Below, piece by piece: positions 3,001 to 58,360 of a DNA stretch of 64,000 nt. Origin of the DNA: Macrostomum lignano (taxonomy: Eukaryota). The stretch is from positions 356,207 through 420,206 of the forward strand of contig NIVC01000576.1 of NCBI GenBank assembly GCA_002269645.1, written 5' to 3'. Every line of letters starts with the position of its first letter. Within the stretch, counting starts at the first letter, position 1. A program made the position numbers and the translations under genes. The notes below the pieces were generated by a model. It saw only the letters and a list, made by a program, of their open reading frames with translations, was not told the origin of the DNA and ran no database searches.

Positions 3001-5910
3001 TCCACTCTCCCTTCTCACTCTCCCTTCTCCCCTCCACTCTCCCTTCTCACTCTCCCTTCTCCCCTCCACTCTCCCTTCTCCCCTCCACTCTCCCTTCTCC
3101 CCTCCACTCTCCCTTCTCCCCTCCACTCTGCCTTCTCCCCTCCACTCTCCCTTCTCACTCTCCCTTCTCCCCTCCACTCTCCCTTCTCCCCTCCACTCTC
3201 CCTTCTCCCCTCCACTCTCCCTTCTCACTCTCCCTTCTCCCCTCCACTCTCCCTTCTCACTCTCCCTTCTCCCCTCCACTCTCCCTTCTCACTCTCCCTT
3301 CTCCCCTCCACTCTCCCTTCTCCCCTCCACTCTGCCTTCTCCCCTCCACTCTCCCTTCTCACTCTCCCTTCTCCCCTCCACTCTCCCTTCTCCCCTCCAC
3401 TCTCCTTCTCCCTCCACTCTCCCTTCTCACTCTCCCTTCTCCCCTCCACTCTCCCTTCTCCCTCCACTCTCCCTTCTCCCCTCCACTCTCCCTTCTCCCC
3501 TCCACTCTCCCTTCTCACTCTCCCTTCTCCCCTCCACTCTCCCTTCTCACTCTCCCTTCTCCCCTCCACTCTCCCTTCTCCCCTCCACTCTCCCTTCTCC
3601 CCTCCACTCTCCCTTCTCCCCTCCACTCTCCCTTCTCACTCTCCCTTCTCCCCTCCACTCTCCCTTCTCCCCTCCACTCTGCCTTCTCCCCTCCACTCTC
3701 CCTTCTCCCCTCCACTCTCCCTTCTCCCCTCCACTCTCCCTTCTCCCCTCCACTCTCCCTTCTCACTCTCCCTTCTCCCCTCCACTCTCCCTTCTCACTC
3801 TCCCTTCTCCCCTCCACTCTCCCTTCTCACTCTCCCTTCTCCCCTCCACTCTCCCTTCTCCCCTCCACTCTGCCTTCTCCCCTCCACTCTCCCTTCTCAC
3901 TCTCCCTTCTCCCCTCCACTCTCCCTTCTCCCCTCCACTCTCCCTTCTCCCCTCCACTCTCCCTTCTCACTCTCCCTTCTCCCCTCCACTCTCCCTTCTC
4001 CCCTCCACTCTCCCTTCTCGCCTCCACTCTCCCTTCTCGCCTCCACTCTGCCTTCTCGCCTCCACTCTCCCTTCTCACCTCCACTCTGCCTTCTCCCCTC
4101 CACTCTCCCTTCTCCCCTCCACTCTCCCTTCTCCCCTCCACTCTCCCTTCTCACTCTCCCTTCTCCCCTCCACTCTCCCTTCTCACTCTCCCTTCTCCCT
4201 CCACTCTCCCTTCTCACTCTCCCTTCTCCCTCCACTCTCCCTTCTCCCCTCCCTTCTCCCTTCTCCCCTCCACTCTCCCTTCTCACTCTCCCTTCTCCCC
4301 TCCACTCTCCCTTCTCCCCTCCACTCTCCCTTCTCACTCTCCCTTCTCCCCTCCACTCTCCCTTCTCCCCTCCACTCTCCCTTCTCACTCTCCCTTCTCC
4401 CCTCCACTCTCCCTTCTCACCCTCCCTTCTCCCCTCCACTCTCCCTTCTCCCCTCCACTCTCCCTTCTCCCCTCCACTCTCCCTTCTCCCCTCCACTCTG
4501 CCTTCTCCCCTCCACTCTCCCTTCTCACTCTCCCTTCTCACTCTCCCTTCTCCCCTCCACTCTCCCTTCTCCCCTCCACTCTCCCTTCTCCCCTCCACTC
4601 TCCCTTCTCCCCTCCACTCTCCCTTCTCACTCTCCCTTCTCCCCTCCACTCTCCCTTCTCCCCTCCACTCTCCCTTCTCCCTTCCACTCTGCCTTCTCCC
4701 CTCCACTCTCCCTTCTCACTCTCCCTTCTCACTCTCCCTTCTCCCCTCCACTCTCCCTTCTCACTCTCCCTTCTCCCCTCCACTCTCCCTTCTCCCCTCC
4801 ACTCTCCCTTCTCCCCTCCACTCTCCCTTCTCACTCTCCCTTCTCACCTCCACTCTCCCTTCTCCCCTCCACTCTCCCTTCTCCCCTCCACTCTCCCTTC
4901 TCACTCTCCCTTCTCCCCTCCACTCTCCCTTCTCCCCTCCACTCTCCCTTCTCGCTTCCACTCTCCCTTCTCGCCTCCACTCTGTCTTCTCGCCTCCACT
5001 CTCCCTTCTCACCTCCACTCTCCCTTCTCACCTCCCCTCTCCCTTCTCACCTCCACTCTCCCTTCTCCCCTCCCTTCTCCCCTCCACTCTCCCTTCTCGC
5101 CTCCACTCTGCCTTCTCGCCTCCACTCTCCCTTCTCCCCTCCCTTCTCCCCTCCACTCTCCCTTCTCGCCTCCACTCTGCCTTCTCGCCTCCACTCTCCC
5201 TTCTCATCTCCACTCTCCCTTCTCATCTTCACTCTCCCTTCTCACCTCTCCTCTCCCTTCTCACCTCCCCTCTCCCTTCTCACCTCCACTCTCCCTTCTC
5301 ACCTCCCCTCTCCCTTCTCCCCTCCACTCTCCCTTCTCACCTCCCTTCTCACCTCTACCTCCCTCGTAGCTCACCTCCACTCTCCCTTCTCACCTCCACT
5401 CTCCCTTCTCACCTTCCCTCTCCCTTCTCACCTCCCCTCTCCCTTCTCACCTCCCCTCTCCCTTCTCACCTCCCCTCTCCCTTCTCCCCTCCACTCTCCC
5501 TTCTCATCTTCACTCTCCCTTCTCACCTCCCCTCTCCCTTCTCCCCTCCACTCTCCCTTCTCGCCTCCACTCTCCCTTCTCATCTCCACTCTCCCTTCTC
5601 CCCTCGACTCTCCCTTCTCGCCTCCACTCTCCCTTCTCACCTCCCCTCTCCCTTCTCCCCTCCACTCTCCCTTCTCATCTTCACTCTCCCTTCTCACCTC
5701 CCCTCTCCCTTCTCCCCTCCACTCTCCCTTCTCCCCTCCCCTCTCCCTTCTCCCCTCCACTCTCCCTTCTCGCCTCCACTCTCCCTTCTCACCTCCCCTC
5801 TCCCTTCTCCCCTCCACTCTCCCTTCTCCCCTCCACTCTCCCTTCTCCCCTCCACTCTCCCTTCTCATCTCCACTCTCCCTTCTCATCTCCACTCTCCCT
5901 TCTCATCTCC
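1..5910. repeat. Polypyrimidine minisatellite array (19-bp unit ACTCTCCCTTCTCCCCTCC mixed with 13-bp and 18-bp variants), open at the window start
   Basis: Units read directly. The + strand is almost purely C/T. Variant units (CACCTCC, CGCCTCC, CATCTCC) accumulate toward the right edge. Confidence 0.97.
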
Positions 5911-6799
5911 ACTCCGCATCATCATTAGCTTGGCCTCTGAGCTCTCCACCAACACAGTCTTACTCCCCTCTTCCCTGCTTCCGGGAGGGCCTCTCCACTC
6001 TCTTCTCCGACCCGAACCCTGAGCTTCATCAAGAGGAAGCAGAGTGAGAGACGCTCTATCGCGAGCTGGCATTTGCCCATCTTTCTGAACCACTACCCCT
6101 GCCTCCGTTGAAGTCTTATTAATTCCTCTAACACAGGTGCGTGTACTACAGCCAGCGCACATAATAGTATTGCTTATTATTCCATAAAGCTGCACCTGTC
6201 AGTCAAACAAGATTTTCAGGCCCCCAGCGACCAACATGAGGTCGTGTCGAAGGCGCTCGTTCCGAATGTCCCACGTCAGGGAGACTGGCAACCCCCCGCC
6301 TAACCTTTATCAACCTGCATTCTTTTCTTTGCCCTTCTACCCTGCCACACCTTCATGTTGCAGTTTGTCATCTGCTATCCGCCTGAGGGTGAAAATCTTG
6401 CCAAATCTTACTGTGGAACTCTGCTAAGAGCAAACATACCTACAATTCGTTGCGTCCGTCAAAAAATTAACGAGACTGTGAACAGAAGAAGACGGTGTGT
6501 CTACCCCTTTTTGAGACACCTGAGGCCGCTGCTGCTTGCTACTCTGGTTGGTACGCAAAGGGCGATGGGGTCATTAATTTGAGGCGCCACTGCAGTAGTG
6601 CTACTTTGATTTTGTTACTCTTGTTAACTACTTCAGTTGTAGGCAAGACTGATCTACAACCCCCCACCTCCTGGTGCTACATGAGTAACCCGAGCTCTCA
6701 AAGTAAAAAATCTCCTAGTTAGTGTGACTGGACTTTTTAGTTTGAATATCGTCTGACTAGAATCTGCTGTCTGCGAAATTTCATTGAAGAATACTCCTC

Positions 6800-7410
6800 T
6801 CCTCACCTTATCGCACTAGCCCCTCCTCTCACCCACCTCCCTCCACTCACCCACCTCCCTCCTCGCACCCACCTCTCTCCACTCACCCACCTCCCTCCTC
6901 TCACCCACCTCCCTCCTCGCACCCACCTCTCTCCACTCACCCACCTCCCTCCTCTCACCCACCTCCCTCCACTCACCCACCTCCCTCCTCTCACCCACCT
7001 CCCTCCACTCACCCACCTCCCTCCACTCACCCACCTCCCTCCACTCACCCACCTCCCTCCTCGCACCCGCCTCCCTCCTCGTACCCACCTTTCATCACAC
7101 CCACCTCTCCTCCTCGCACCCTCCTCCCTCCTCGTACCCACCTTTCATCACACCCACCTCTCCTCCTCGTAGCTCGTACCCACCTCTCCTCCTCTCACCC
7201 ACCTCCCTTCACTCACCCACCTCCCTCCTCGCACCCTCCTCCCTCCTCGTACCCACCTTTCATCACACCCACCTCTCCTCCTCGTAGCTCGTACCCACCT
7301 CTCCTCCTCTCACCCACCTCCCTTCACTCACCCACCTCTCTCCTCGCACCCTCCTCCCTCCTCGCACCCGCCTCCCCCCTGTACCCACCTCTCCTGCTCG
7401 CACCCACTCC
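6800..7410. repeat. Degenerate ~18-bp minisatellite (CACCCACCTCCCTCCTCT-like)
   Basis: Tandem units visible; explains the GGRWVS/REVGE ORFs. Confidence 0.9.
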
Positions 7411-15085: not shown

Positions 15086-15553
15086 ATGGCCGTGAACCCA
15101 GCCGACACCGTCACCATCACGGTTGGTGGCGCCAACTTCGTCACCCGACGCGCCACCCTGTACCGGTTTCCCAACACACGCCTGTACAACCAGATCGCTG
15201 CCGACGAGATGCAGAAGGACGCGTACTATTTCGACCGGGACCCTGAGGTGTTTCGCTTCATCCTAGACTTCTATCGCACCGGAGAATTGCACCTGCCGAC
15301 AAATATCTGCGGCCCGTTCGTGCGCAAGGAGCTCATCTTCTGGGGCATCCACGAGGCCAGCATCGGGCCCTGCTGCCTGCCGCACTACGTGCGATTCGAC
15401 GAGGAGAAGCGGACGAAGAACACGCTGTTCAAGGACTGCTTCGAGGACATCGAGCCGATGCAGTCGCTGGTGCGCTGCAGCAGAGGTTTCCGGAGACTGC
15501 GCTACCGGATGTGGCTGTTTCTGGACTATCCAACCTCTTCATTGCCGGCTAAG
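15086..15553 (+). CDS. Shaw: Shaw/Kv3-family voltage-gated K+ channel, coding exon 1 (T1/BTB tetramerisation domain)
   Basis: YYFDRDPEVFRFILDFYRTGELHLPTNICGPFVRKELIFWGI...PCC matches the Kv T1 domain with the Kv3/Shaw-type H-x5-C...CC Zn motif. Donor AAG|GTGAGT, phase 0. Confidence 0.92.
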
Positions 15554-15599
15554 GTGAGTTTTACTATTGTACCTGAAGTTGTGATTTGTGATAGTTGCG

Positions 15600-16045
15600 A
15601 AGAACCGAGTCTGCAGCACCGGAGAGATGTTACGAACAGCCCGGAGACGAGATCTCTGCGACATTGGGCAGAGAATCCAGTCGAGGCGGGTGTTGCGACC
15701 ATTCTTGGGCCATGAAAAATTGGTAGAACACTGAGGCGTTGGTGAAGGCAGCCCATCGGCCGTCAACCGGGAGGGGAGCACTGGAGTCGCTAGTGACAAT
15801 GATGAGGTGCCGGGAGGCCAGCTGGTCTAGCAGAGCATTTAGTTGGTCCTAGAAGCTCTCAGCTGCAGATGGATCTGGAGATGTGTTTGGTGCAGTTGGC
15901 GCATGCACACAGATAACATTGAGGCGCCTGTACTCCAGAGCGAAAGAGGCATGACCGATGCGCTCAGAGAGGAAGTTGATCGAGAGGAGCGATCGGGGAG
16001 AGCTTCTGGGGAGAGCAAGAAGCCAATGCCCCCCCACGCCTTGAG
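15600..16045 (-). pseudogene. Decayed non-LTR retrotransposon (LINE) APE endonuclease fragment in Kv intron 1
   Basis: Across frameshifts and a TAG at 15849-15851 it reads GVGGIG...ERIG...VICVHAPT...ESF*DQLNALLDQL...LIIVTSDSSA...FSWPKNGRNTRLDWILC. These correspond to the APE motifs VYAPT, FYDQL, GDFNA and TW...IDYIL. Confidence 0.75.
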
Positions 16046-16674
16046 CAGAGGCAGGTGAGACAGTGAAACTTCACCCTTTGTACAGACTGGTCTCGAGGTC
16101 TCTAAATAAACTTCAGAGACTTTTAATCAGCGTGTAGACGGAGAATATTGATATTTCTTAGAAAAAATTGTTCTATTCTTCGGATTAGATATCAAGCGAG
16201 ACTGAGAGAGACTTCTATAATTTACATGCATAAGCGTACAATAAAATGCGAATTTGAGTAGCGCGCTCATCGAAGACGAGACGAGAGAAAGAGAGAGTTT
16301 GGCTGGCTGGATCCCGCGGTCGGGCGAAGCCAGGAATTGCCTTCATCCGGACCGCCAACTCGCTGATTATTATTAATTTGACTGTCGGCCGAAGAAACTC
16401 GTAGGAAAGGAGGGTGGGGAGAGGCGGGTTGCAGAGGCTGCGACTGGCAGCGAGGCCAGCAAGGAGAGCTTGAGAAAGGGAGAGTTGAGGAATTCAGAGG
16501 AAGGCAAATCACAGCAGAAAAAGAAGAGGAGATTCCCTTGCCCGGGCCAGAGAGCAGCCCAATCTCGCCATCGCGCTCTCTTGCTCTCTCAATTTCTTGC
16601 AGACTCCGTCATTTTCTTTTAGTATTCAGCACTTCCTTTCAGGCCGATCCAGAAATCCAAACCGAGCCTCTGTC

Positions 16675-19600
16675 CAGGGAATCCTAAAGACCTGGAAGTG
16701 ACACTGTCCAATGGGGGCGGTCCAACTCAGGCCGATCCTACCTAACCAAACAAGGCAGCCCATGCCATTTTCTATAGGGTTTTCAGTATCAACTCGATGA
16801 TACAGCGCTGAAAAGTCATATCCCCTGAATTTTTTAAAGTCCTTATTGTAACGAAATAAACGAAAGTTTCATGAGGCCTTTTATAAGAAACAATTATGCA
16901 TAAAACTGGTAAACCATAGGCTATATAAACATAAAAAGGGTTTTAATCAAACTTACCAGGGTTGAAGGATCATCGGACATCAGAAAGGCAGTAATTATGC
17001 ATCAGGATAAACTGGGAGCTTACTCGTAAATAAAATAATTAGCAGTAACTCGGAATCGTCAAAACAATGAAGCTTATAAAAATATACTATTACGAGTACT
17101 AAGGATTCAATTTGGCCAGTTTGCGAGAGCAGTCCTCAGTTCTCTTCTGTTCTCCCGATTTCCGTTTGCCTACAACGGATGGGCGGTTAGCTTCAGAAGA
17201 AAGGTTTTTCAGAAAACAGTTTAGGAGTCGGAAAGAAAACTGCCGAATGACTTGTCTAAGTGAATGATTTGAGCAGCGGAAGCGACGAGCCGAAAATTTT
17301 GCACAGTTTTGAGTTTTTACTATCACGACTGATGCGAATGTTTGATGCGGTTTAAAGCTTTTAAGCTTCTGCAGCAGCTGCTTGGAGCCCTTGATGAGCT
17401 CAAACGAATTGAACGCTGTCATGCAGAGAACGAAAGCAGAATCCGATGGACAGCACAGTCCTCCCCGTGATGACTGTCGAACTAGGAAATCACGATTAGG
17501 AGCATCGTCGAGAGTCACTTCCATTGGAGGGACCTTGTCTTCGCTCACCAAAAATTCTCTACAATCAGCACATCCCTTGCTGATGGACTTTGAAAGGTAA
17601 CCTGCTATGTAGAACATCACGTTCAAACAGCCCATCTCGTTACTGCGCAAGGTCATGCATGGCTCATCTGACACATCAGCGAAGATTTCTGCTGCTCTTA
17701 GACTAACGTCAGTGTCTTCCTGCTCAACATCCTTCATGAAAGACTTCTTTAAGCGTAGCAAGTCTATTTCCGAGTGCTTAAGCAATGAAGTCATTCTAAG
17801 TTTATTCTCGGACTGAACGACCTGCTTTGCACTGATAAAATACAATCCGCCGGACATCTGCCTGTACTTTCCGAACTGCCTTTCAAGAGGATCGGACAAC
17901 AACTTTCCCAGCAGAATGTAGTCAAAGTGGCCAGTAGAAAAAAGTTTCGCACACAATAGTGGAATGGCTGAGCATGTTTGAATGAGGCTGCCAAATGTCT
18001 CGTTTGTCAGACCATCTGCGCCTGTTGATACCGCTCGCCACTTCTTTAGGAAGCCAACAAAGTCAGCAAGGTACTGGAGCTGCCAGTCTTGCATATTAGT
18101 TAGCGGCTCACTTTCCGGTCTTCTTAATTGTTGACCGGCGAATGGCGTTCGAACATTCAATATTGCCCACAGCTTCCTGATCATGGACAAGAAATTGGCT
18201 GTGCTATTGAACGTTGAAGTGTCTACCTCCGTGCTCTTTGTGCTTGAATACAGTCTGAGTGCAGAAACTGTTGTGTCATCGAACACAGCTGCAGCCAGTG
18301 AAGCACTAGTTCTCTCGACATTAAGAGGACGTAAAACCTTCTCCGACAGACGGAAGGCAATCTTTGACGACTGACCTCTTTCAATTTCAAAAATAGCCTC
18401 AACATCACTGAACCTTGCCACAAAGTTGCTGCAATTGTCGAACGCTGGACAGTGAAATACACCTCGTCTCTGAAAGTTGTTATACACATTTTTAATGTTG
18501 TGAGTAGTGTCCATCAGCAAGAAGATTTCTTTCTGATCGTCACATGGATGTCGCATAGACAGCCCATGTTCAGGTACAGCTGACATTGAGTAAAACTTTC
18601 GGTTGACAGAGGAGTTGTCACAGGACAATGCAACAATTTCAAATCCACTCTTTGTGACAGCCGCAATCACTTCCTTGGCCATGTTGCATAAGTCCAGAGC
18701 GGTCAAGCAGTTAACAGGAAATAGACCGACAACATCCTGATAGGATGCGCCGACGGACTTGATTAGAAAGGCAAGAATTGAGGAGGTCATTTTACCGTCA
18801 CTCGCAAGGCCGTAAGCAGAGTCGCAATTGAACTCGATTCTTTTAGCTGTTGCGACCTCATCAATAATGAGCACAACGTGCTTCTCTCTGCTAGACAGTG
18901 ACTCTGTCCTCAACTGCAGGTACATTTCCTCAACCACTCCAGGCTCCTTCGAAAGAACAGCATTTAGCCTGACAAGGCTTCTTACAGATGGTAGGCAGAG
19001 GGCACCATTTTCTAGGATTGCCTTATAGGCGGCACGACTTGTCGAAAAGATCAAGTACGCAAACACAGTTGTTGATGGTGAATATCGTCGAGCAGATACT
19101 TTTTGATGAATCAGTGAGAACTGTTCAGCTAAGAAATTGACATTGCTGCTCAGTTCAGAATCATCACTCAAAGATTCGAGGTAGACTTTTAAAACGCCTT
19201 CAACAAATGCAGACGACACATTTGAATTGCGAGAGTCAACAGCAACAGTAGCCGAAGACTTAATCAAGGCTAACATGTTTTCTAAAGTCGAAAGCTGACG
19301 CACATGTAGCGAGTCATCTTTGAGCAGGTGTTTAAACATGCTATCAGAGCAAGAAAGGCCAGAGATGAAGACTTGGAAGGTAAGGTCCTGCAGTACTGTC
19401 ATAGAGGCAAGCAGACAAGGAGCTGAAATCGAGTCAGATCTTGTTATCAAGTAAAACGAGACTGAATCTGCTTCCTTACTTCTGACGAATCCAGAGGGAA
19501 TCGTCGCTTGTTCCAGCTTTTGAATCAAATCGCTGAAATCGCACAACTCGTCGGAGCCAAAAAAGTCGCTGATTTCCTCATCTAAGCGGACTTGGTCTCC

Positions 19601-20370
19601 CATGAAGCGCGCAGCGGAAGTGGCATTTTGACTTCTTACCTGCGTAATTGGCTTGCTCAGGTATTTCGGCAAGCCTTCAAATTGAGATGGAACTGCATCG
19701 TCTTTGAGTCGAATCAGATGCAGCTTTGAATCAGATGCAGAAAAGCGTCGTTTCTTCCGGCGTTGATTCGCATCCGATGAACTCTTCACGAAATCTGATT
19801 CAGTGAAATGCTTCGAGCAGACGCGTTGAAATTCGGAAGCATTTAAATCAGCATTTGGAATGGCGCGAAGCCAGCGCTGTCGCAAGTTGGTGTCTTTAGG
19901 AAAAGCATAATAGCTCACATTTTCTGTCTTCTGCGACGCGTAGCCAGATTTGCAGCCAAATACACAGCACTTGTAACCCATTATGATGCTTGCAAATGAG
20001 AGGATATTCAGTTTGATTATGAACACACGAAAGCTTACTTAAATGCAGCTCGATAGGGGCATAAGAGTTATGTGTGCATTCAACAGTGCGTCATCATGTT
20101 TAGAATTCGTACACTCATGTACAATGCGCTCCTTTCATATTGAATCAGTCTTTATTTGGACAGTGATTTTCTCTGCACTCTCTATCCTCTCAGTCCACTC
20201 AACCCCTTCTCTATCCTTCGTTCCTCCCTTTTTCGAGTCGCTTTACTAGCCCCTGCAAGAAAATGTTTTTCCTCTTTGTCCTCTCTCCCAAAAAAGTTAT
20301 CGGCCTGGGTTGGACCGGCCTGGAGGGCCTGAATATTGCAGTGTCACTTCCAGGTCTTTAGGATTCCCTG
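16675..20370 (-). mobile_element. Full-length P-element-superfamily (THAP9-like) DNA transposon, 3696 bp, antisense within Kv intron 1
   Basis: Perfect 32-bp TIRs CAGGGAATCCTAAAGACCTGGAAGTGACACTG (16675-16706 and 20339-20370). 7-bp TSD CTCTGTC (16668-16674 and 20371-20377). Encloses one intact transposase ORF. Confidence 0.95.
17099..19981 (-). CDS. P-element/THAP9-type transposase, 960 aa, single uninterrupted ORF
   Basis: N-terminal THAP C2CH finger (CCVFGC...FPKD...RWL...VCSKHF). RNase H-like catalytic motifs VLIIDEV, LSCDNSS, MDTTHNIKNVYNN and SDPLERQFGKYRQMSGG. C-terminal YIAGYL...CADC and GGLCCPS. First ATG is at 19981; the ORF track starts at an upstream GTG. Confidence 0.93.
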   Translation of the reverse strand: MGYKCCVFGCKSGYASQKTENVSYYAFPKDTNLRQRWLRAIPNADLNASEFQRVCSKHFTESDFVKSSSDANQRRKKRRFSASDSKLHLIRLKDDAVPSQFEGLPKYLSKPITQVRSQNATSAARFMGDQVRLDEEISDFFGSDELCDFSDLIQKLEQATIPSGFVRSKEADSVSFYLITRSDSISAPCLLASMTVLQDLTFQVFISGLSCSDSMFKHLLKDDSLHVRQLSTLENMLALIKSSATVAVDSRNSNVSSAFVEGVLKVYLESLSDDSELSSNVNFLAEQFSLIHQKVSARRYSPSTTVFAYLIFSTSRAAYKAILENGALCLPSVRSLVRLNAVLSKEPGVVEEMYLQLRTESLSSREKHVVLIIDEVATAKRIEFNCDSAYGLASDGKMTSSILAFLIKSVGASYQDVVGLFPVNCLTALDLCNMAKEVIAAVTKSGFEIVALSCDNSSVNRKFYSMSAVPEHGLSMRHPCDDQKEIFLLMDTTHNIKNVYNNFQRRGVFHCPAFDNCSNFVARFSDVEAIFEIERGQSSKIAFRLSEKVLRPLNVERTSASLAAAVFDDTTVSALRLYSSTKSTEVDTSTFNSTANFLSMIRKLWAILNVRTPFAGQQLRRPESEPLTNMQDWQLQYLADFVGFLKKWRAVSTGADGLTNETFGSLIQTCSAIPLLCAKLFSTGHFDYILLGKLLSDPLERQFGKYRQMSGGLYFISAKQVVQSENKLRMTSLLKHSEIDLLRLKKSFMKDVEQEDTDVSLRAAEIFADVSDEPCMTLRSNEMGCLNVMFYIAGYLSKSISKGCADCREFLVSEDKVPPMEVTLDDAPNRDFLVRQSSRGGLCCPSDSAFVLCMTAFNSFELIKGSKQLLQKLKSFKPHQTFASVVIVKTQNCAKFSARRFRCSNHSLRQVIRQFSFRLLNCFLKNLSSEANRPSVVGKRKSGEQKRTEDCSRKLAKLNP

Positions 20371-20637
20371 CTCTGTCCCCCCTGGGGGGGGGGCTGAGCT
20401 GCGGGATTCCGGCTTTCCGCTTTCCCGTCTGCTTCTTTAAAGAAAGAGAAAAAGGACGGAGAAAGAAAAAAACGAGGGTGGGAGACCCGGCTTATAGAGT
20501 GAAAAGGTCGAGTAAAGTAGATTTTCAGATATAACAGTGGAATGCAGTCTGGAGGGAGGGGATGCCTAGCCTGATAGTTGAGATCTGCAAGCATTGCCAT
20601 CAGCCAAGTTGCCTGAAAGTTTATCCCGGAGCAGCCT

Positions 20638-21272
<635 letters not shown>

Positions 21273-21759
21273 TTAGCAGCACAAAGCAGTGGGGCAGGCA
21301 ATTGGAATATTGCATCCCATTAGCCCTATTTCTATCACCCAGACTCCAGCAAATCTCGAGCAAGGAGCGACATTCCTTCCCTAGCAACAAATCCGCTACA
21401 GCCTAAATGCGAGATTTTAGCAACTTCAGCCAATTAACAAACCACTAATGGAGTCCCAGATTCGTGTCCAAGTAGCATGCAGCAAATGGCTTTCATTGCT
21501 ACATCTCCCTCGCAATGTTCATCAGCCAGGCTGCCCGACTTCAGACATCTGTTAAACGGGCATTGTCTGGCAGAACAGAAAGAATTTGGAGAGCAGAGTC
21601 CGTTACTGGGTAATGTGAAATTATCCAATTGAAAAATACGCTGGCCATTCTCAGCTTTGTTGCAAAAACTCTTGAACTCATTGATAAATACGAGATATTT
21701 GCCTCCTTTGCCCTCTCTGTGTCCTACTTTTAATCATCCCACTTCAATACACCCTATCT

Positions 21760-22330
21760 CCTCTATATCCCTGTCTAATCTCCTCTCTATCCCTGTCTAA
21801 TCTCGTCTCTATCCCTGTCTAATCTCCTCTCTATCCCTGTCTAATCTCCTTTCAATCTCTATTTAATCTCCTCTCTATCCCTGTCTAGTCTCCTCTCTAT
21901 CCCTGTCTAGTCTCTTCTCTATCCCTGTCTAATCTCCTTTCAATCTCTATCTAATCTCCTCTCTATCCCTTTCTAATCTACCCTCTATCCCTGTCTAATC
22001 TCCTCTCTATCCCTGTCTAATCTACCCTCTATTCCTGTCTAATCTCCTCTCTATCCCTGTCTAATCTCGTCTTTATCCCTGTCTAATCTCGTCTCTATCC
22101 CTGTCTAACCTCCTCTATATCCCTGTCTAATCTCTTTTCTATCCCTGTCTAATCTCCTCTCTATCCCTGTCTAATCTACCCTCTATCCCTGTCTAATCTC
22201 CTCTCTATCCCTGTCTAATCTCGTCTTTATCCCTGTCTAATCTCGTCTCTATCCCTGTCTAACCTCCTCTATATCCCTGTCTAATCTCTTTTCTATCCCT
22301 GTCTAATCTCTTCTCTATCTCTGTCTTATC
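21760..22330. repeat. 22-bp minisatellite (CTATCCCTGTCTAATCTCCTCT), block 1
   Basis: Tandem units read directly. Confidence 0.93.
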
Positions 22331-23149
22331 TCTTTAATTATCCCAGCCTGAATCGTATTTTAGATCTCTTTCAACTCTCTATCTTTATGGCTTCTTCCTG
22401 TCTCCTCCCTAAGTCCCTAATTTCGCTCGTGCTGACAGAAACAACACAAAATAGTACACGATGAAACTTTTTCGTGTGGCTTGATGCTTCTGCTTCTGAA
22501 AATGGAGGAGCTCAACAAACTTTCAACTGGAAAATCATTTCCATTCTCGTCTCGGATGTCCTCGAAAAAGCTCTAGGCAGATTGGTTTTAACACGCGTAC
22601 AGGGATTACTAAAATCCAGATGTTATAAAGCGTCCTTGCACGCATAGGGTCGGCTCTAAGGCCTGTCTGTCACCTGTCAGGCCGGATCGTGCATGCTAGG
22701 AAGATGAGGATTTCACCGGCTTAGCGCGCAGAAATCCCACCCCGAATTTATCTGGGGGAAAAGCGCAAATCCCTCTTTCGGCTGTCTCAGGCGCTAGCCA
22801 TATACTTTGAGGCTGGTAAAACAAATCATTTCTAAATATATATGACGACTTATTCCGCCTCACCTATCTGAGGAGGGACTTGGGAGTCCAGACTGGGTTG
22901 CTATGGCTTCACAGATACTGACAACCCCACCGAATATCTTATCAGGCCTCGCTCCACTGTCGGCTGTTTGGCAATTCAAATATCCGGCTGCGGATTGAAG
23001 CTTTCAGACTGGCCGGCCGGCTTGCTGCTAAACAAACCGAAGCTTTCATAAATCTTTGCTGCGATGAGGACCGGCATTGGGAAGCGCCCGCAGTGTGGAC
23101 TGCTGTCACATGTGATGGCTGAAGCTTCTGGTGGGATCACTGATTCTGG

Positions 23150-23530
23150 AGAATCATCACTGAATCTGGGGGATCACTGATTCTGGGGGGTCACTGATTC
23201 TGGGGGATCACCAATTGTGGGGTATCACTGATTCTGGGGGGTCACTGATTCTGGGGGATCACCAATTGTGGGGTATCACTGATTCTGGGGGGATCACTGA
23301 TTCTGGGGAATCATCACTGATTCTGGGGGATCACAGATTCTGGGGAATCATCACTGATTCTGGGGATTTCTGGGGATCACTGATTCTGGGGGATCACTGA
23401 TTCTGGGGATCACTGATTCTGGGGGATCACTGATTCTGGGGGATCACTGATACTGGGGGATCACTGATTCTGGGGGATCACTGATACTGGGGGATCACTG
23501 ATACTGAGATATCACCAATTGTGGGGATCA
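23150..23530. repeat. ~17-bp minisatellite (GGGGGATCACTGATTCT)
   Basis: Tandem units read directly. Confidence 0.9.
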
Positions 23531-24124
23531 ATGAGATACCACTGATTCTGATGTAGAGGGATATACATGTAAGATTTTGAGTAGTAGAAGAGGTTTTGAG
23601 AGATGAAAATTGTGAGATGACTGGAAGCACCTGCTTACAGAATATTAGCGTACAATATCATTATCAAGCATAGAATAAGTAAACACCAAGGATACATCGC
23701 AAATCAGCAGACCGAAAAGCCCTAAAGGATATCAGGCCAGCCAGACGGAAGCGATTTCATGCAGTTCTTGCAGCTGAACTCAAATATAGTTGCTATGGGA
23801 AGTTCAGTTGATCCTGACTGAATTTGGCAGGCCTCCTATAGTTTCTTGCTTGGCTCACATGTTAATTTGACTGTCTGGTTGACCGTCTGCTTCAGTTCCA
23901 TATTGATTATCAATGAGGCGAATCAATTGCTCTGATGGGTGTACAGTTATTGACGCAAATAAGATTACGAAGCAGTAATGCATTGTATGCTGATGCTGAC
24001 TGACTGAAGTACTCATAAGTGTCTGAACTGTCTGATGCTAGCTTTCTTAGTATGATAGCGCCACAAATATCCACATCTGCATGCATCTGCTCTGCAGAAC
24101 TTGTTTTTATGCTTGGCTGTCTCA

Positions 24125-25520
24125 TCTCCTCTATCCGCCTGATCTTTCCTCTATCACTGTCGAATCTCCTCTCTATCCCTGTCTAATCCCTTCTCTATCC
24201 CTGTCTAATCTCCTCTCTATCCCTGTCTAATCCCTTCTCTATCCCTGTCTAATCCCTTCTCTATCCATATCTAATCTCCTCTCTATCCCTGTCTAATCCC
24301 TTCTCTATCCCTGTCTAATCCCTTCTCTATCCATATCTAATCTCCGCTCTATCCCTGTCTAATCCCTTCTCTATCCCTGTCTAATCTCCTCTCTATCTCT
24401 GTCTGATCTCCTCTTTATCCCTGTCTAATCTCGTCTCTATCCCTGTCTAATCTCCTCTCTATCCCTGTCTAATCTCCTCTCTATCTCTGTAATCTCCTCT
24501 CTATCCCTGTCAAATCTCCTCTCTATCCCTGTCTAATCTCGTCTCTATCCCTGTCTAATCTCCTCTCTATCCCTGTCTAATCTCCTCTCTATCCCTGTCT
24601 AATCTCCTCTCTATCCCTGTCTAATCTCGTCTCTATCCCTGTCTAATCTCCTCTCTATCCCTGTCTAATCTCCTCTCTATCCCTGTCTAATCCCTTCTCT
24701 ATCCCTGTCTAATCTCCTCTCTATCTCTGTCTGATCTCCTCTTTATCCCTGTCTAATCTCGTCTCTATCCCTGTCTAATCTCCTCTCTATCCCTGTCTAA
24801 TCTCCTCTCTATCTCTGTAATCTCCTCTCTATCCCTGTCTAATCTCCTCTCTATCTCTGTCTGATCTCCTCTTTATCCCTGTCTAATCTCGTCTCTATCC
24901 CTGTCTAATCTCCTCTCTATCCCTGTCTAATCTCCTCTCTATCTCTGTAATCTCCTCTCTATCCCTGTCTAATCTCGTCTCTATCCCTGTCTAATCTCCT
25001 CTCTATCCCTGTCTAATCTCCTCTCTATCCCTGTCTAATCCCTTCTCTATCCCTGTCTAATCTCCTCTCTATCTCTGTCTGATCTCCTCTTTATCCCTGT
25101 CTAATCTCGTCTCTATCCCTGTCTAATCTCCTCTCTATCCCTGTCTAATCTCCTCTCTATCTCTGTAATCTCCTCTCTATCCCTGTCTAATCTCCTCTCT
25201 ATCTCTGTCTGATCTCCTCTTTATCCCTGTCTAATCTCGTCTCTATCCCTGTCTAATCTCCTCTCTATCCCTGTCTAATCTCCTCTCTATCTCTGTAATC
25301 TCCTCTCTATCCCTGTCTAATCTCCTCTCTATCCCTGTCTAATTTCCTCTCTATCCCTGTCTAATCTCCTCTCTATCCCTGTCTAATCTCCTCTCTATCC
25401 CTGTCTAATCTCCTCTCTATCCCTGTCTAATCTCCTCTCTATCTCTGTAATCTCGTCTCTATCCCTGTCTAATCTCCTTTCTATCCCTTTTAATCTCCCC
25501 TCTATCTCTGTCTAATCTCC
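24125..25520. repeat. 22-bp minisatellite (CTATCCCTGTCTAATCTCCTCT), block 2
   Basis: Same unit and orientation as block 1. Confidence 0.93.
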
Positions 25521-26274
25521 TTTCTATCCCTGTCATATCTAACCTCTCAAGCTGCTCCTTCCCTTCACTTTCATCTGTCTCAGCCTCCTCTATTTGTATT
25601 TTAATTCCCCATCTTCCTGGCCTGCTCTACCCTGCTCAGCCTTCCTCACCTCCCGTTTCCAGGAACTTCAGATCCAATTAGCCTGCAGAACGGAGTTTTC
25701 AATTAACCGGCCAGAATCCCTGTGCTCAATTCCCAGCCCCAAGTGCAGCTCAAATGCCCTGTTCCCTTCCTAGACAGCTTAAAATCCCCATCCTAATGGA
25801 GTTTGTTTCCTTTCGGCGCCAGGTGCTGCAAAATTCATCTATAACTCGAATACAGTTCCAGTTCACGTGTTCAGCAGATTATTCACCATTCCCTGGGGAA
25901 GATTGCAATCCGCATGCCAATTAACTTAGCAGACTGCATCAGCCATGCAGAGCCAGTAGCTAAAGAAAGAATTTTAAATAAAAGAAGAGGTTCGTTAAAA
26001 AATGAATTGAATTTTCATCCCCCACCACCCGACGTGGGCGGTTGGGGCACCGTCGCTCGCTGATCTAAGCCTCACTTTTCATTCTAAAGCTGAATTTATT
26101 TAAATCGCATATTGAATAAATAAATACGAAATGAAAAAAATTTCCGAATTAACGACGTCACACGAGAGTCCGATTAATTTAATTAGGAACCCATTTCATA
26201 TAGTAAATGTGGCTTCATAGTAAGACTGATTGACGTCAAAACAGACTGGAATGTACTTTGACTCTAAAACGGAG

Positions 26275-26975
26275 TGTAAGAGACGCTAACACCGGATGTA
26301 TAGGTGACGCTAACACCGGATGTATAGGTGACGCTAACACCGAATGTATAGGTGACGCTAACACCGGATGTATATGTGACGCTAACACCGGATGTATAGG
26401 TGACGCTAACACCGGATGTATAGGTGACGCTAACACCAGATGTATAGGTGACGCTAACACCGGATGTATAGGTGACGCTAACACCGGATGTATAGGTGAC
26501 GCTAACACCGAATGTAAGTGACGCTAACACCGGATGTAAGAGACGCTAACACCGGATGTATAGGTGACGCTAACACCGGATGTATAGGTGACGCTAACAC
26601 CGGATGTATAGGTGACGCTAACACCGAATGTAAGTGACGCTAACACCGGATGTAAGAGACGCTAACACCGGATGTATAGGTGACGCTAACACCGGATGTA
26701 TAGGTGACGCTAACACCGGATGTATAGGTGACGCTAACACCGGATGTATAGGTGACGCTAACACCGGATGTATAGGTGACGCTAACACCAGATGTATAGG
26801 TGACGCTAACACCAGATGTAAGAGACGCTAACACAGGATGTAAGAGACGCTAACACCGGATGTATAGGTGACGCTAACACCGGATGTAAGAGACGCTAAC
26901 ACCGGATGTAAGAGACGCTAACACCGGATGTAAGAGACGCTAACACCGGATGTAAGAGACGCTAGCACCGGATGT
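26275..26975. repeat. 24/22-bp minisatellite (GACGCTAACACCGGATGTATAGGT)
   Basis: Tandem units; 8-aa periodic ORFs. Confidence 0.95.
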
Positions 26976-27559
26976 GAGGCACGCAAGAAGTTAATTGCTC
27001 GTGTAATTATTATTAACCAGCTCGTAATTCCTGACAGCTGTTCGCCCCTCTCAATCTTATCCAAGTCCCTGTCTGCCTGTTCTCATCAGCCAGTCTACGT
27101 CTGAGAATCCGGATAGACAGGCTGAAAAGTCCAAATGATTCGGCTTCCCCACATCTGTTGCTGGGCGGTTAATTAAGTCCGCGACTCGAAGTGAGTAGCG
27201 GTGGCCACGATGGAGTAGGGAGGCTGGGTTCTCGCTTTCACTTATTCACTCTCATAGGAAGAAAGGGCTGCAGGAACCCTAGTGGCTTTCTCTAAGTCTG
27301 CAAGCTCAAGTGGCTCGGCTCTTGAATATATTATTGAGATTGAAGTCTGCTTCCATTGTGCCATCCACCTCAAGCAGTGCTTTAGTGCGCGCAAGTTTAT
27401 TGACTCAACGGGCCTAAGGAAAGGAGACTGAGAAGCCGGTTCCTCTCTAAAGGCCGAAAGACTGACTGTTGTATTTCAGCTTTTTTGTAAGGTTGGAGTC
27501 ACTCTAAACTGACTAAATTCTCCTTAGTTATTACCTGGAATCCTACGATTTCCTGCTCA

Positions 27560-27870
27560 ATACTAATAACAATTGATTACACCTGCCTTTTTGGGCAGAT
27601 GTGCAACCGACAGCTCAGCCGCAGCTATTGCGCGGCGCATCTGAAGGCTGCGTACGGCTGTTCAGACCAAGGACTGAAGGGGGGGACGCTGCACACAGTC
27701 TCAATTACCCCAGCTAATGCTGGCACCCATTTTACAGCTGGGTGAACTGAAGCAATTCAGAGTTACAGTGTCTTGCTCAAGGAAACCAATTTTTCCAGTG
27801 GGATCGGGAATCGAACCCCCGACCTTTAAGTCGCGAGTCCGACGCTCTAACCACTGGGCTACAAACCCCC
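27560..27870 (-). mobile_element. tRNA-derived SINE with a CORE/V-like central segment
   Basis: Minus strand: A box TAGCCCAGTGG, B box GGTTCGATTCCC, non-pairing anticodon stem, then CCTTGAGCAAGACACT...CACCCAGCTGTAAAATGGG resembling the conserved SINE core, and an AT-rich TTATTAGTATT tail. The 3' boundary is approximate. Confidence 0.7.
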
Positions 27871-28356
27871 AGACCTCTGACTCCCAGGCTGCTCAAACAC
27901 GATAAATTTATTCTGAATTTCAAAGTATGAGCGTAATAAGTTTCATCTCCAGGTGCTGCTTTTAGGTCTCCATGAATTCCTCCTGAGTGCTTGTAGTAAA
28001 ACAAGAAATTTTAATACTGTTCAAACAGGAAATCTTAGATGCAGAGTTCGCTCCGTAATTATACAGTATCGCTTTCCGATGCCAGCCCGCGGCGGATCCC
28101 CGTAGCCTCAGACTCCGCCAGCTGCATCGATTCTCTCTTTCTAGCCAGAAATCCTCGCCAACGGAAAAGTTCGATTCTGCTTTTAGTAAATTAACTGAAT
28201 CGCTTGACAAAAGAGAATACGGGAATAAAATTCGACATTAAGATAAGAAACAGGTCCATGAGGGATGAAAGCCAGGAACTCGACAGTTCTTAGGCCAGAA
28301 CTTTGAGTTGGGAAAACTGAAACAAATTTGTGCTAACAGACTGTTTTTTGGATTCT

Positions 28357-28827
<471 letters not shown>

Positions 28828-28860
28828 GTTAAATTTAACGAGCCCATCTCTCTTCCGCAG

Positions 28861-29608
28861 CTGTGGGCGATGCTGCTGCTCCTGCTGATGATCTGCAGCG
28901 TGATGTGCTACTGCCTGCAGACGCACCTGGCCTTCAGATCGCCCAGCTCCAAGGTGGCCTGGAACAACGGCACCACCGGGATCTGTCGGGACGAGCTTCG
29001 CTCCACGAACTCAAAGGTGCGCAAGGACTGCGAGACCGAGCCGCTGCAGGGCCTCGTAATCGTGGACATCACGCTGAACGCCGTGTTCACTTTTGAGTTC
29101 TTCATCAAACTGGTTGTGTCCCCTGACAAGACGAAATTCTTGAAGTCGCCGATCTCCATCATGGACATCATCATCCTGGGCTCCTACTGGATCTACGTGT
29201 CCCTGTTCTTCTTCTACTACTACAGACCGGACGCGGAGGAGCTTCAGCAGTGGTCCGCCGACCCACCCGGCGTGACCCTCTGGTGGCTCAACGTCCTATC
29301 AATGTCTCAGGCCTTGAGAATACTTCGTGTGTTCAAGATTAGCAAAATTAGTCGGGGTCTGCGGGTGCTGATGCTGACGGTGAAGAAGTCCATCCCGGAG
29401 CTGGTGCTGCTGGGCTTCCTACTGATGAACGGCATGTTCCTGTTCAGCTCCATGGTGTACATGGCCGAGTACAGGCAGATTGACACGTTCAGCGACATTC
29501 CCGAGGCATTCTGGTGGAGCATCATCACCCTCACCACGGTGGGCTACGGCGACATTGTGCCGAAGGGCGGTCCCGGCTTCATCGTGGGATCGATTGCCGC
29601 GGTGTCTG
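28861..29608 (+). CDS. Shaw: Shaw/Kv3 channel coding exon 2 (S1-S5, pore loop, start of S6)
   Basis: Acceptor CTCTCTTCCGCAG|, in frame with exon 1. S2 FTFEFFIK, S4 LRILRVFKISK, selectivity filter WWSIITLTTVGYGDIVP. Donor G|GTGAGT, phase 1. Confidence 0.95.
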
Positions 29609-29639
29609 GTGAGTTGCTGTGGGCTGGGGGTGATGGCGA

Positions 29640-41830: not shown

Positions 41831-41876
41831 AGCTGGAGAACAAAGCGGATGGAAGAACTCAGTCCAGAGCACTCAC

Positions 41877-49674: not shown

Positions 49675-49734
49675 GTGAGGATTTGTTATTTGACACTTTC
49701 AACTAGTCTTCTTGACCCCGAACTGACGAATTGC

Positions 49735-55220: not shown

Positions 55221-55367
55221 AAGACACGAAGCATGATTCAAAGACACGTGCGAGTCACGATGTGCTAGTTTTGCTATCACCGAAACTGCAAAACACTATT
55301 ATCGATTAATAACACGATAAGACACTATTGAAATGAAAAATTATTCATTAAAACCGCAAATCTCCAG

Positions 55368-57885: not shown

Positions 57886-58360
57886 TTTTAAAGCTATGAA
57901 AGTTCAGCTATGTGATTTTGTATCAAATTCAACGCATTTCAGCGAATGCCAAGTTCACATATTATCATCCAGTCAGGCCAGGTTAGAGGTTTATCTAGGC
58001 TTTTGTGGATTTTTTTATTTTTACTCAAATTTTATCCATCCCTCTGCGCATAACTTTTTCACGGAATATGTATCGGGATTTCACCTAAACACAATGCTAT
58101 TTGTTGTATTTGTCACCAGAAGGGACTCTTGAAAATGGTTTACAATGGTCAGGAAATGAGTAGTTTGTTTACCTTTAATCAATGTTGCACAATAGCGTGG
58201 GTCAGCTTGTCAACAGAAAAGTTTTTCTAATTCCCGAAATTACCCTTTACTGACTTTAGCGCACATGTTTCACCTGGTTTTTATTTTTTGCTGACCAGCT
58301 CATTAAAAGCAGAAAATAGCAAAGCAGTAACCTCCTGCTATTTAATTCGGTGTTTTGCAG

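What the first reader, a model, noticed from the sequence alone, without database searches (positions are those of the whole stretch)
16675..20370. Complete, probably active P-element/THAP9-family transposon inside a K+ channel intron
Seen: perfect 32-bp TIRs beginning CA, an exact 7-bp TSD (CTCTGTC), and a stop-free 960-aa ORF with a THAP finger plus all three candidate catalytic acidic residues (IIDEV, SCDNS, DPLER) and the DxxH motif. Established: the P superfamily makes 7-8-bp TSDs and has CA-starting TIRs; Drosophila P transposase is multi-exon and is controlled by splicing. Inference: zero TIR or TSD decay suggests a recent insertion by an autonomous element with an intronless transposase, in what looks like a non-insect host. 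It could be an undescribed family and a candidate native transgenesis or mutagenesis tool.
Basis: partly seen in the sequence, partly recalled or inferred. Interest (0 to 1): 0.8.

Follow-up and report, generated by a model that had tools for sequence, protein, structure and literature searches.

The report
Intact P-type transposon in flatworm intron
This is a complete, young copy of a P-element-type "cut-and-paste" jumping gene in an intron of a potassium-channel gene of the flatworm Macrostomum lignano: a new member of a known transposon superfamily, with no direct evidence yet that it still moves.

Summary
There are perfect 32-bp terminal inverted repeats (TIRs) at 16675-16706 and 20339-20370. 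An exact 7-bp target-site duplication (TSD), CTCTGTC, flanks them. A 960-aa stop-free ORF lies on the minus strand (19981 to 17099). It has a THAP finger and an RNase H-like domain, and its residues D374, D455, E700 and D491xxH494 align to D230, D303, E531 and D339/H342 of Drosophila P transposase.

The host is Macrostomum lignano (GCA_002269645.1). The element lies antisense in a 13.3-kb intron of a Shaw/Kv3-type K+ channel gene with canonical splice sites.

It belongs to a large, mostly unnamed animal clade of single-ORF P-like elements, at 28-38% protein identity. Nine relatives share its 3.4-3.8 kb size and CA-starting TIRs. Several also share the TIR sequence, and two share a 7-bp TSD. 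In all of them a subterminal repeat lies 10-13 nt further from the TIR at the 5' end than at the 3' end, as in Drosophila P (21 vs 9 bp).

Activity is inferred only. The open ORF limits neutral decay to under about 3%. No second near-identical coding copy was found, and the genome itself could not be searched. Three GTP-contact residues of P transposase, including D444, are not conserved.

Verdict: new member of a known kind, moderate interest.

The parts
16668..16674 (.). Left copy of the 7-bp target-site duplication, CTCTGTC
   Evidence: Identical to 20371-20377.
16675..16706 (+). Terminal inverted repeat at the 3' end of the element relative to the transposase: CAGGGAATCCTAAAGACCTGGAAGTGACACTG
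   Evidence: 32/32 complementary to 20339-20370. It shares the CAKGGARTCCTAWA..CTGGA pattern with TIRs of distant relatives.
16715..16736 (+). Subterminal inverted repeat at the 3' end (core CGGTCCAACTCAGGCCGAT, 16718-16736), 8 nt inside the TIR. Candidate THAP/transposase binding site (inference).
   Evidence: Only two matches in the window, 0.02 expected.
16942..16947 (-). ATTAAA, a possible polyadenylation signal 152 nt downstream of the stop codon
   Evidence: This is a motif match only.
17099..19981 (-). Single uninterrupted transposase ORF, 960 aa plus stop
   Evidence: It is colinear end to end with 930-950 aa relatives.
19679..19969 (-). THAP zinc-finger DNA-binding domain (aa 5-101) with C5, C10, C55, H58 plus P28, W37, F59, P98
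   Evidence: Pfam PF05485, 3.8e-17. These columns are invariant in alignment A1. The signature is as defined in PMC4168063.
18590..18943 (-). N-terminal half of the RNase H-like catalytic domain (aa 347-464) with D374 (codon 18860-18862) and D455 (codon 18617-18619)
   Evidence: Pfam PF21787, 4.7e-12. The residues align to D230 and D303 of Drosophila P transposase.
18134..18502 (-). Insertion domain (aa 494-616), homologous to the GTP-binding insertion domain of P transposase. It is preceded by D491xxH494 (codons 18500-18511).
   Evidence: Pfam PF21788, 26.4 bits against a cut-off of 24.8. GTP-contact residues are only partly conserved.
17882..17893 (-). D697-P-L-E700: the third catalytic residue E700 and the residue equivalent to D528
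   Evidence: Aligned to D528 and E531 of 6p5a.
20299..20320 (-). Subterminal inverted repeat at the 5' end, 18 nt inside the TIR
20339..20370 (-). Terminal inverted repeat at the 5' end of the element
20371..20377 (.). Right copy of the 7-bp target-site duplication, CTCTGTC
15086..15553 (+). Host exon: T1/BTB_2 tetramerisation domain of a Shaw/Kv3-type K+ channel, ending AAG|GTGAGT
15554..28860 (+). Host intron (13,307 nt) that holds the element. It is otherwise full of minisatellites.
28861..29610 (+). Host exon: S1 to pore (TVGYGD) of the same K+ channel, preceded by CCGCAG. The 3' boundary is approximate.

Best explanation
Window 16675-20370 is a structurally complete, autonomous-type class II (cut-and-paste) DNA transposon of the P superfamily. 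It is 3,696 bp long and lies in the genome of the flatworm Macrostomum lignano. It inserted fairly recently, in antisense orientation, into a 13.3-kb intron of a Shaw/Kv3-type K+ channel gene.

Shown here:
- Perfect 32-bp TIRs that start with CA, and a 7-bp TSD.
- A subterminal inverted repeat placed 18 nt from the TIR at the 5' end and 8 nt from it at the 3' end.
- One 960-aa ORF with a THAP zinc finger, a split RNase H-like domain carrying D374/D455/E700 and D491xxH494, and an insertion domain homologous to the GTP-binding domain of P transposase.

Inferred mechanism, by homology with Drosophila P transposase:
- The THAP domain binds the subterminal repeats.
- The two unlike ends are paired. 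The one-helical-turn difference in spacing would enforce pairing of a 5' end with a 3' end.
- The DDE site cuts both ends and joins the 3' OH ends to staggered target positions 7 bp apart.
- Gap repair then creates the TSD.

I put the probability that this particular copy can still transpose at about 0.5. I regard a GTP requirement as open.
For: Anatomy.

Protein family:
- Pfam THAP, TNP-like RNase H N-terminal domain and GBD.
- Best solved structure by sequence is Drosophila P transposase 6p5a: 1.3e-12 with the single sequence, 3.1e-39 with a profile, aligned through E531.
- Foldseek on the model puts 6pe2/6p5a first (E 4e-17, TM about 0.6 normalised to the target), far ahead of Hermes and RAG1.

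Catalytic map: D230=D374, D303=D455, D339/H342=D491/H494, D528=D697, E531=E700. These residues are essential in DmTNP and hTHAP9 (PMC8230255).

Host and site: (GCA_002269645.1, contig NIVC01000016.1).

Youth: the probability that a 2,883-nt ORF stays open under neutral substitution is 0.33 at 1%, 0.12 at 2% and 0.04 at 3%.

Family context:
- 513 representative proteins at E<=1e-30. In 98 full-length relatives the DDE and D(2)H residues are kept in at least 96.
- Nine related elements share CA-starting TIRs, and several of them also share the TIR sequence.
- Two relatives (L016, L022) have perfect 7-bp TSDs.
- In all nine, the 5' spacing between TIR and subterminal repeat exceeds the 3' spacing by 10-13 nt.
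- A 65%-identical, internally deleted relative exists in M. lignano.
Against: There is no direct evidence of mobility.

- The 90%-identity protein cluster of this transposase has one member on one contig. No second near-identical coding copy is therefore visible.
- The M. lignano genome could not be searched at the DNA level. Copy number, other TSDs and empty sites are unknown.
- No fragments or MITE-like derivatives of the ends occur elsewhere in the 64-kb window.
- Of the eight GTP-contact residues of DmTNP, K400, S409 and D444 are replaced by S559, D568 and A606. D444C abolishes DmTNP activity (PMC8230255). The replacement is clade-wide, so it argues for a different pocket rather than a dead copy.
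- The AlphaFold model is poor (mean pLDDT 59.8).
Confidence: 0.85

Rival explanations
1. It is a young but already immobile copy. It would be the last intact member of a family that has stopped moving in M. lignano. It looks intact because too little time has passed for decay. It would be disabled by missense changes or kept silent by the host, for example through piRNAs.
For: Only one coding copy at 90% identity or more is visible in the protein collection. The only other M. lignano relative found is 65% identical and internally deleted. The open ORF is still compatible with up to about 2-3% neutral divergence. A606 sits at the position of DmTNP D444.
Against: All catalytic and THAP signature residues are intact. 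Both TIRs are perfect and both subterminal repeats are in place. The D444 replacement is shared by most of the clade, including elements with perfect TIRs. The protein collection only sees copies that carry a gene call.
Confidence: 0.35
2. It is a domesticated THAP9-like host gene rather than a transposon.
For: There is a long intact ORF. The deposited genome carries a gene model for it (860 aa, partial). THAP9 genes are domesticated in vertebrates (PMC7776569).
Against: Perfect TIRs, a perfect TSD and paired subterminal repeats are retained. Domesticated copies lose these. The ORF sits antisense inside another gene's intron. There is no close orthologue in other species: the next relatives outside M. 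lignano are at most 38% identical.
Confidence: 0.03
3. It is an assembly artefact or contaminant DNA.
For: None specific. Relatives turn up in metagenome assemblies whose flanks are often unreliable.
Against: The element is embedded in a 922,637-bp M. lignano contig. It lies between two exons of one flatworm-type Kv channel gene that splice cleanly. Identical 7-bp host sequence is present on both sides.
Confidence: 0.01

Closest known systems
Drosophila melanogaster P element and its transposase (DmTNP; PDB 6p5a/6pe2)
   Same: - Same domain order: THAP finger, helical region, RNase H-like domain split by an insertion domain.
- The DDE triad and the D(2)H motif align residue for residue.
- TIRs are 31-32 bp and start with CA.
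- Subterminal inverted repeats are present.
- The two ends differ in TIR-to-inner-site spacing by about one helical turn: 9 vs 21 bp in P (PMC7776569), 8 vs 18 nt here.
   Different: - About 19% identity in the structure-based alignment.
- 960 aa against 751 aa (751 is from my own knowledge).
- One uninterrupted ORF here, against four exons with regulated splicing in P.
- 7-bp TSD here, against 8 bp in P.
- The GTP-contact residues K400, S409 and D444 are not conserved.
- No hit to Pfam PF12017 or PF21789.
Galileo and 1360 (the other named Drosophila members of the P superfamily)
   Same: 7-bp TSD, THAP domain, DDE and D(2)H (PMC4168063).
   Different: Galileo has very long, internally repetitive TIRs, whereas this element has short 32-bp TIRs. 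The sequences were not compared directly here.
Zebrafish Pdre2 / zfTHAP9 and human THAP9
   Same: THAP9-type transposase from a non-insect animal, studied as a single cloned ORF. Pdre2 has CA-starting TIRs, subterminal inverted repeats and a TSD, and internally deleted derivatives exist (PMC10983969). P0002 in M. lignano is a comparable internally deleted relative.
   Different: Pdre2 has 13-bp TIRs, subterminal repeats about 400 bp inside and an 8-bp TSD. Human THAP9 has no TIRs and is domesticated. zfTHAP9 excises but does not integrate (PMC10983969).
Unnamed clade of single-ORF P-like elements, about 3.4-3.8 kb, in other invertebrates (proteins annotated in Nymphon striatum and Caligus rogercresseyi; metagenome contigs L004, L006, L009, L015-L017, L022, L025, L037)
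   Same: - Transposases of about 900-950 aa, colinear end to end.
- TIRs of 24-42 nt with the consensus CATGGARTCCTATATA..CTGGA.
- Perfect 7-bp TSDs in L016 and L022.
- The subterminal repeat lies 10-13 nt further from the TIR at the 5' end in all nine related elements.
- D444 is not conserved.
   Different: Protein identity is only 28-38%. The subterminal repeat sequence differs apart from a frequent AGGCC core. The hosts of the metagenome contigs are unknown.

Membership tests
P superfamily of DNA transposons | N-terminal THAP C2CH zinc finger with the invariant P, W, F and P residues | tested here: met
   Pfam PF05485, 3.8e-17 and 63.3 bits against a cut-off of 23.9. C5, C10, C55, H58, P28, W37, F59 and P98 are invariant in A1. 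The signature is as given in PMC4168063.
P superfamily of DNA transposons | RNase H-like catalytic domain with a DDE triad homologous to D230/D303/E531 of DmTNP | tested here: met
   D374, D455 and E700 align to them. The profile matches 6p5a at 3.1e-39. Foldseek's top hit is 6pe2 at 4e-17.
P superfamily of DNA transposons | [C/D](2)H motif after the second catalytic D (signature string, PMC8230255) | tested here: met
   D491-T-T-H494 aligns to D339/H342.
P superfamily of DNA transposons | Insertion domain between beta5 and alpha4 that binds GTP | tested here: inconclusive
   The domain is present: Pfam PF21788, 26.4 bits against a cut-off of 24.8. Of the eight GTP contacts, D528 and N447 are kept. 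K385, V401 and F443 are replaced conservatively by R, A and W. K400, S409 and D444 are replaced by S, D and A. GTP binding itself cannot be tested with these tools.
P superfamily of DNA transposons | Terminal inverted repeats flanked by a 7-8-bp target-site duplication | tested here: met
   32-bp perfect TIRs and a 7-bp perfect TSD. 7 bp is the Galileo value and 8 bp the P value (PMC4168063, PMC7776569).
Autonomous, currently active transposon | Several near-identical copies at different sites with different TSDs, or presence/absence polymorphism | not testable with these tools
   No M. lignano genome database is on hand. Indirectly, the 90% protein cluster has one member on one contig. There are no other copies of the ends in the window. 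The exact TIR is absent from metagenome contigs.
Autonomous, currently active transposon | Intact transposase ORF together with both cis-acting ends | tested here: met
Autonomous, currently active transposon | Excision and integration catalysed by the encoded protein | not testable with these tools
   This needs an experiment.
Domesticated THAP9-like gene | Loss of TIRs and TSD, with a conserved orthologous position under purifying selection | tested here: not met
   TIRs, TSD and subterminal repeats are intact. Orthology across species could not be tested.

The most novel reading that the evidence does not exclude
This element would be a transposition-competent member of a distinct, so far unnamed lineage of the P superfamily that is widespread in invertebrates. 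The lineage has a single exon, is about 3.6 kb long and makes a 7-bp TSD. It has a shared TIR consensus and a GTP pocket that lacks the D444 equivalent.

In all ten elements examined, the inner repeat lies about one helical turn (10-13 nt) further from the TIR at the 5' end than at the 3' end. That suggests an end-pairing rule, analogous to the 12/23 rule of V(D)J recombination, that is ancestral to the whole superfamily. Because the element sits in a flatworm in which transgenesis works, the rule and the GTP requirement could be tested directly.
Probability: 0.35. Interest if true: 0.55.

Novelty: new member of a known kind. Interest (0 to 1): 0.35.

Why it matters
P-type elements are best understood in Drosophila. 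Outside insects only a few have been studied, such as zebrafish Pdre2 and domesticated THAP9.

A complete copy in Macrostomum lignano, a regenerating flatworm with working transgenesis, would give a second tractable system. It could be used to ask which features of P transposition are general: the GTP cofactor, asymmetric end pairing, and a 7-bp versus an 8-bp stagger.

The comparison made here suggests that asymmetric spacing of the inner repeats is conserved across very distant relatives, while part of the GTP pocket is not.

In practice the element is a candidate mutagenesis or transgenesis vector, and a possible source of insertional polymorphism in laboratory lines. The first point is tempered because piggyBac already works in this animal (PMC8717057). 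For genome annotation, it marks a K+ channel gene that is missing from the gene calls returned for this locus.

Tried and rejected
1. Empty-site test through paralogous or allelic copies of the host gene. I searched with the joined Kv exons. The only other M. lignano hit (P0166, 95% identity to the T1 exon) exists only in UniRef, with no contig, so no second locus could be fetched.
2. Contig look-up for the 65%-identical M. lignano relative P0002: not on record.
3. Exact TIR search in metagenome contigs: 0 hits.
4. Search of the window for further copies, fragments or MITE-like derivatives of the element ends. Only 10-13-nt matches at chance level (E about 0.3 or more) were found. This includes a 12-mer, TCAGGCCGATCC, 25 nt left of the insertion site. 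I first took it for a remnant of an older copy and now treat it as chance.
5. An 8-bp TSD reading. It is rejected because it would make the element ends asymmetric, and the 8-mers do not match.
6. AlphaFold2 model from a 6-sequence alignment. It is poor (mean pLDDT 59.8). I used it only for the fold search, not for active-site geometry.
7. Checking the minus-strand 1036-aa GPS/7tm_2 gene model that spans the region in the deposited genome. No such exon was found among ten minus-strand ORFs, so it stays unverified.
8. Literature searches for P-like elements in Macrostomum or other flatworms. Nothing was found in the searchable library. Repbase/Dfam could not be consulted.
9. TSDs in relatives. 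Several metagenome contigs show no TSD. I attribute this to unreliable flanks of repeats in short assemblies, not to a different mechanism.
10. Correction: my notebook entry misnumbered the third catalytic residue as E742 and its neighbour as D739. The correct positions are D697 and E700.
Full report
**1. The observation**

- The arms 16675-16706 and 20339-20370 are 32 nt long and perfectly complementary.
- They are the only matches to that sequence in the window, even allowing three mismatches, with none expected in shuffles.
- CTCTGTC lies directly outside both arms, at 16668-16674 and 20371-20377. Neither an 8-bp nor a 9-bp duplication fits.
- On the minus strand an ORF runs from the ATG at 19981 to the stop at 17099-17101, giving 960 aa.
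- The motifs IIDEV, SCDNS, MDTTH and SDPLER are at aa 372, 453, 490 and 696.
- The element is 3,696 bp: 389 nt before the ATG, and 424 nt after the stop with one ATTAAA motif.
A second, subterminal inverted repeat (16715-16736 and 20299-20320, core CGGTCCAACYCAGGCCGAT) lies 8 nt inside the TIR at one end and 18 nt inside it at the other.

**2. What the protein is**

- Pfam finds a THAP domain (3.8e-17), the TNP-like RNase H N-terminal domain (4.7e-12) and, just above its cut-off, the TNP-like GTP-binding insertion domain (26.4 bits against 24.8).
- The best solved structure by sequence is Drosophila P element transposase, 6p5a. The E-value is 1.3e-12 with the single sequence and 3.1e-39 with a six-sequence profile, aligned from residue 133 to 558.
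- An AlphaFold2 model was of low confidence (mean pLDDT 59.8). It still retrieved 6pe2/6p5a first (E 4e-17, TM about 0.6 normalised to the target). Hermes and RAG1 followed far behind.
- Residue mapping gives D230=D374, D303=D455, D339/H342=D491/H494, D528=D697 and E531=E700. These are the DDE triad and the D(2)H motif of the P-superfamily signature. Their mutation cripples both DmTNP and human THAP9 (PMC8230255).
- The eight THAP signature residues (C2CH plus P, W, F, P; PMC4168063) are present and invariant among relatives.

The GTP pocket is only partly conserved.
- Eight DmTNP residues are reported to contact GTP (PMC7776569).
- D528 and N447 are kept.
- K385, V401 and F443 are replaced conservatively, by R544, A560 and W605.
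- K400, S409 and D444 become S559, D568 and A606.
- D444C abolishes DmTNP activity (PMC8230255).
- In 98 full-length relatives, however, the D444 position is mostly N or K, with D in only 12, while the DDE and D(2)H residues are kept in at least 96.
- So this is a property of the clade, not a lesion of this copy. Whether GTP is a cofactor here is open.

**3. Host and insertion site**

- The window's protein is on record in GCA_002269645.1, contig NIVC01000016.1 (922,637 bp). The 65%-identical relative P0002 is named by UniRef as Macrostomum lignano. From my own knowledge this accession is the Mlig_3_7 assembly of that flatworm.
- On the + strand, 15086-15553 encodes a T1/BTB_2 domain. The stretch from 28861 onwards encodes S1 to the pore, with TVGYGD.
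- The first exon ends AAG|GTGAGT and the second is preceded by CCGCAG.
- The joined protein aligns without a gap across the junction to a 546-aa Kv protein, at 62% identity and 99% coverage. Named relatives are Shaw/Kv3-type channels.
- The element therefore lies 1.1 kb into a 13,307-nt phase-0 intron, antisense to the channel.
- This channel is not among the genes returned for the locus. Instead a 1036-aa GPS/7tm_2 model on the other strand spans the region. I could not find its exons.

**4. Relatives**

- A full HMMER pass over 1.84 billion representative proteins gave 7,134 hits at E<=1e-3 and 513 at E<=1e-30.
- More than 100 of them are proteins of about 900-950 aa, colinear with this ORF at 28-38% identity. 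An intronless ORF of about 950 aa is thus the norm for this clade.
- The few named members come from a sea spider (Nymphon striatum) and a copepod (Caligus rogercresseyi, several copies on different chromosomes).
- Within M. lignano the only other relative found is P0002. It is 65% identical over aa 29-603, then jumps to the last 30 residues. That is an internal deletion inside a chimeric gene model, the classic form of a non-autonomous P derivative.

**5. Architecture shared by the clade**

I fetched contigs encoding relatives and looked for their ends. Ten elements, counting the window's, have recognisable ends. The others are L004, L006, L009, L015, L016, L017, L022, L025 and L037.
- The full-length ones are 3.4-3.8 kb.
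- Their TIRs are 24-42 nt and start with CA.
- Although the proteins are only about a third identical, several TIRs are alike: consensus CATGGARTCCTATATA..CTGGA, against CAGGGAATCCTAAAGACCTGGAA in the window.
- L016 has a perfect 7-bp TSD (ACTGGTG). L022 also has one (ACTAGAT) once its TIR is started at CA. L017 matches at 5 of 7 positions.
- The remaining contigs show no TSD. I attribute this to unreliable flanks of repeats in short metagenome assemblies.
- In all ten elements the best subterminal inverted repeat lies further from the TIR at the transposase-start end than at the other end. The differences are 10, 10, 13, 11, 10, 10, 11, 11, 11 and 11 nt, about one helical turn.
- Many of these repeats contain AGGCC.
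- Drosophila P has the same kind of asymmetry, 9 vs 21 bp between the TIR and the transposase-binding site. It has been likened to the 12/23 rule of V(D)J recombination (PMC7776569). That review assigns 9 bp to the 5' end. My recollection of the primary literature is the reverse, which would match the polarity seen here. I did not resolve this.

**6. How it most likely works**

Shown: the cis elements and the catalytic residues are all present and in the right order.

Inferred by homology with DmTNP (PMC7776569):
- The THAP domain recognises the subterminal repeats.
- The protein oligomerises and pairs one 5' end with one 3' end.
- The DDE site cleaves the ends and transfers the 3' OH ends to target phosphates 7 bp apart.
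- Repair then gives the CTCTGTC duplication.
- Regulation by tissue-specific splicing, as in Drosophila, cannot apply to a single-exon ORF. Control would have to act on transcription or through small RNAs. This is speculation.

**7. Age and activity**

- Zero differences at 39 compared TIR+TSD positions only bounds pairwise divergence below about 7% (P = 0.05 at 7.4%).
- The open ORF is more informative. Under neutral substitution alone it would stay open with probability 0.33 at 1%, 0.12 at 2% and 0.04 at 3%. Indels would tighten this bound.
- So the copy is young, or it is under selection for transposase function.
- Against ongoing proliferation: the 90% protein cluster of this transposase has one member on one contig, and no other copy of its ends lies in the window.
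- The genome itself could not be searched, so copy number remains unknown.
- I put identity as a complete P-superfamily transposon at about 0.85-0.9. I put present-day competence of this copy at about 0.5.

**8. Comparison, novelty and verdict**

- It meets every sequence-level criterion of the P superfamily that I could test. Only GTP binding is left inconclusive.
- It resembles canonical P in TIR length, the CA start and end asymmetry. It resembles Galileo/1360 in its 7-bp TSD (PMC4168063). It resembles Pdre2/zfTHAP9 in being a non-insect THAP9-type transposase studied as one ORF (PMC10983969).
- It is not domesticated, because its ends and TSD are intact.
- I found no paper describing P-like elements in Macrostomum or other flatworms. 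Repbase/Dfam could not be checked. The protein itself is already deposited as an unnamed partial gene product.
- The interest is moderate. The useful extras are the clade-wide one-turn asymmetry of the ends, the divergent GTP pocket, and the fact that the host is experimentally tractable (PMC8717057).

Noticed in passing
window 15086-15553 and 28861-29610 (+): A Shaw/Kv3-type voltage-gated K+ channel gene with clean splice sites is not among the gene calls returned for this locus. A 1036-aa GPS/7tm_2 (adhesion-GPCR-like) model on the opposite strand spans window 7680-29367 instead. Its exons could not be found among ten minus-strand ORFs.
   Followed up: partly
window 1-5914: A 19-nt satellite (ACTCTCCCTTCTCCCCTCC, about 331 copies) with extreme strand asymmetry (GC skew about -0.98). 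A related 18-nt array lies at 6821-7407.
   Followed up: no
window 49735-55220 (-): A 36-nt tandem repeat, about 152 copies at 97% identity. It is in frame and gives a 1,843-aa stop-free ORF (49703-55234, minus strand) with only a weak NKAIN Pfam hit. It could be a highly repetitive coding gene or a satellite that happens to be open.
   Followed up: no
window 8091-41835, many sites: The intron around the element and its neighbourhood are packed with minisatellites of period 4-31 nt. Examples are TATC/CTAT/AGAT arrays at 9387, 20910 and 28362, and a 22-nt array at 21756-25534. More than a dozen arrays score above 200.
   Followed up: no
window 16639-16650: The 12-mer TCAGGCCGATCC, which is part of the element's subterminal repeat (16727-16738), also occurs in host DNA 25 nt left of the insertion site. 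Across the whole window, 12-13-nt matches to the element ends occur at chance level (E about 1), so it is probably coincidence.
   Followed up: yes
window 41873-42673 (-) and 58288-61394 (+): Other host coding exons: a ubiquitin C-terminal hydrolase (UCH) domain (8.6e-29) and CFAP65/HYDIN-like Ig-domain exons (4.2e-20).
   Followed up: no
L015, L016, L017, L022, L025, L009 (metagenome contigs): Several relatives have 100%-identical TIRs of 28-37 nt and full-length ORFs, so this clade looks recently active in its unknown hosts too. Many of the contigs come from a small set of JGI samples (Ga0056xxx, Ga0209xxx), which suggests one or a few eukaryotic hosts sequenced along with their microbes.
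   Followed up: partly
P0002 (UniRef A0A1I8IVA6, M. lignano): A 1,173-aa gene model fuses about 530 unrelated N-terminal residues to an internally deleted P-like transposase (aa 29-603 plus the last 30 residues, 65% identity). This is evidence of a second, older P-like lineage in the same genome, and of a chimeric annotation.
   Followed up: partly
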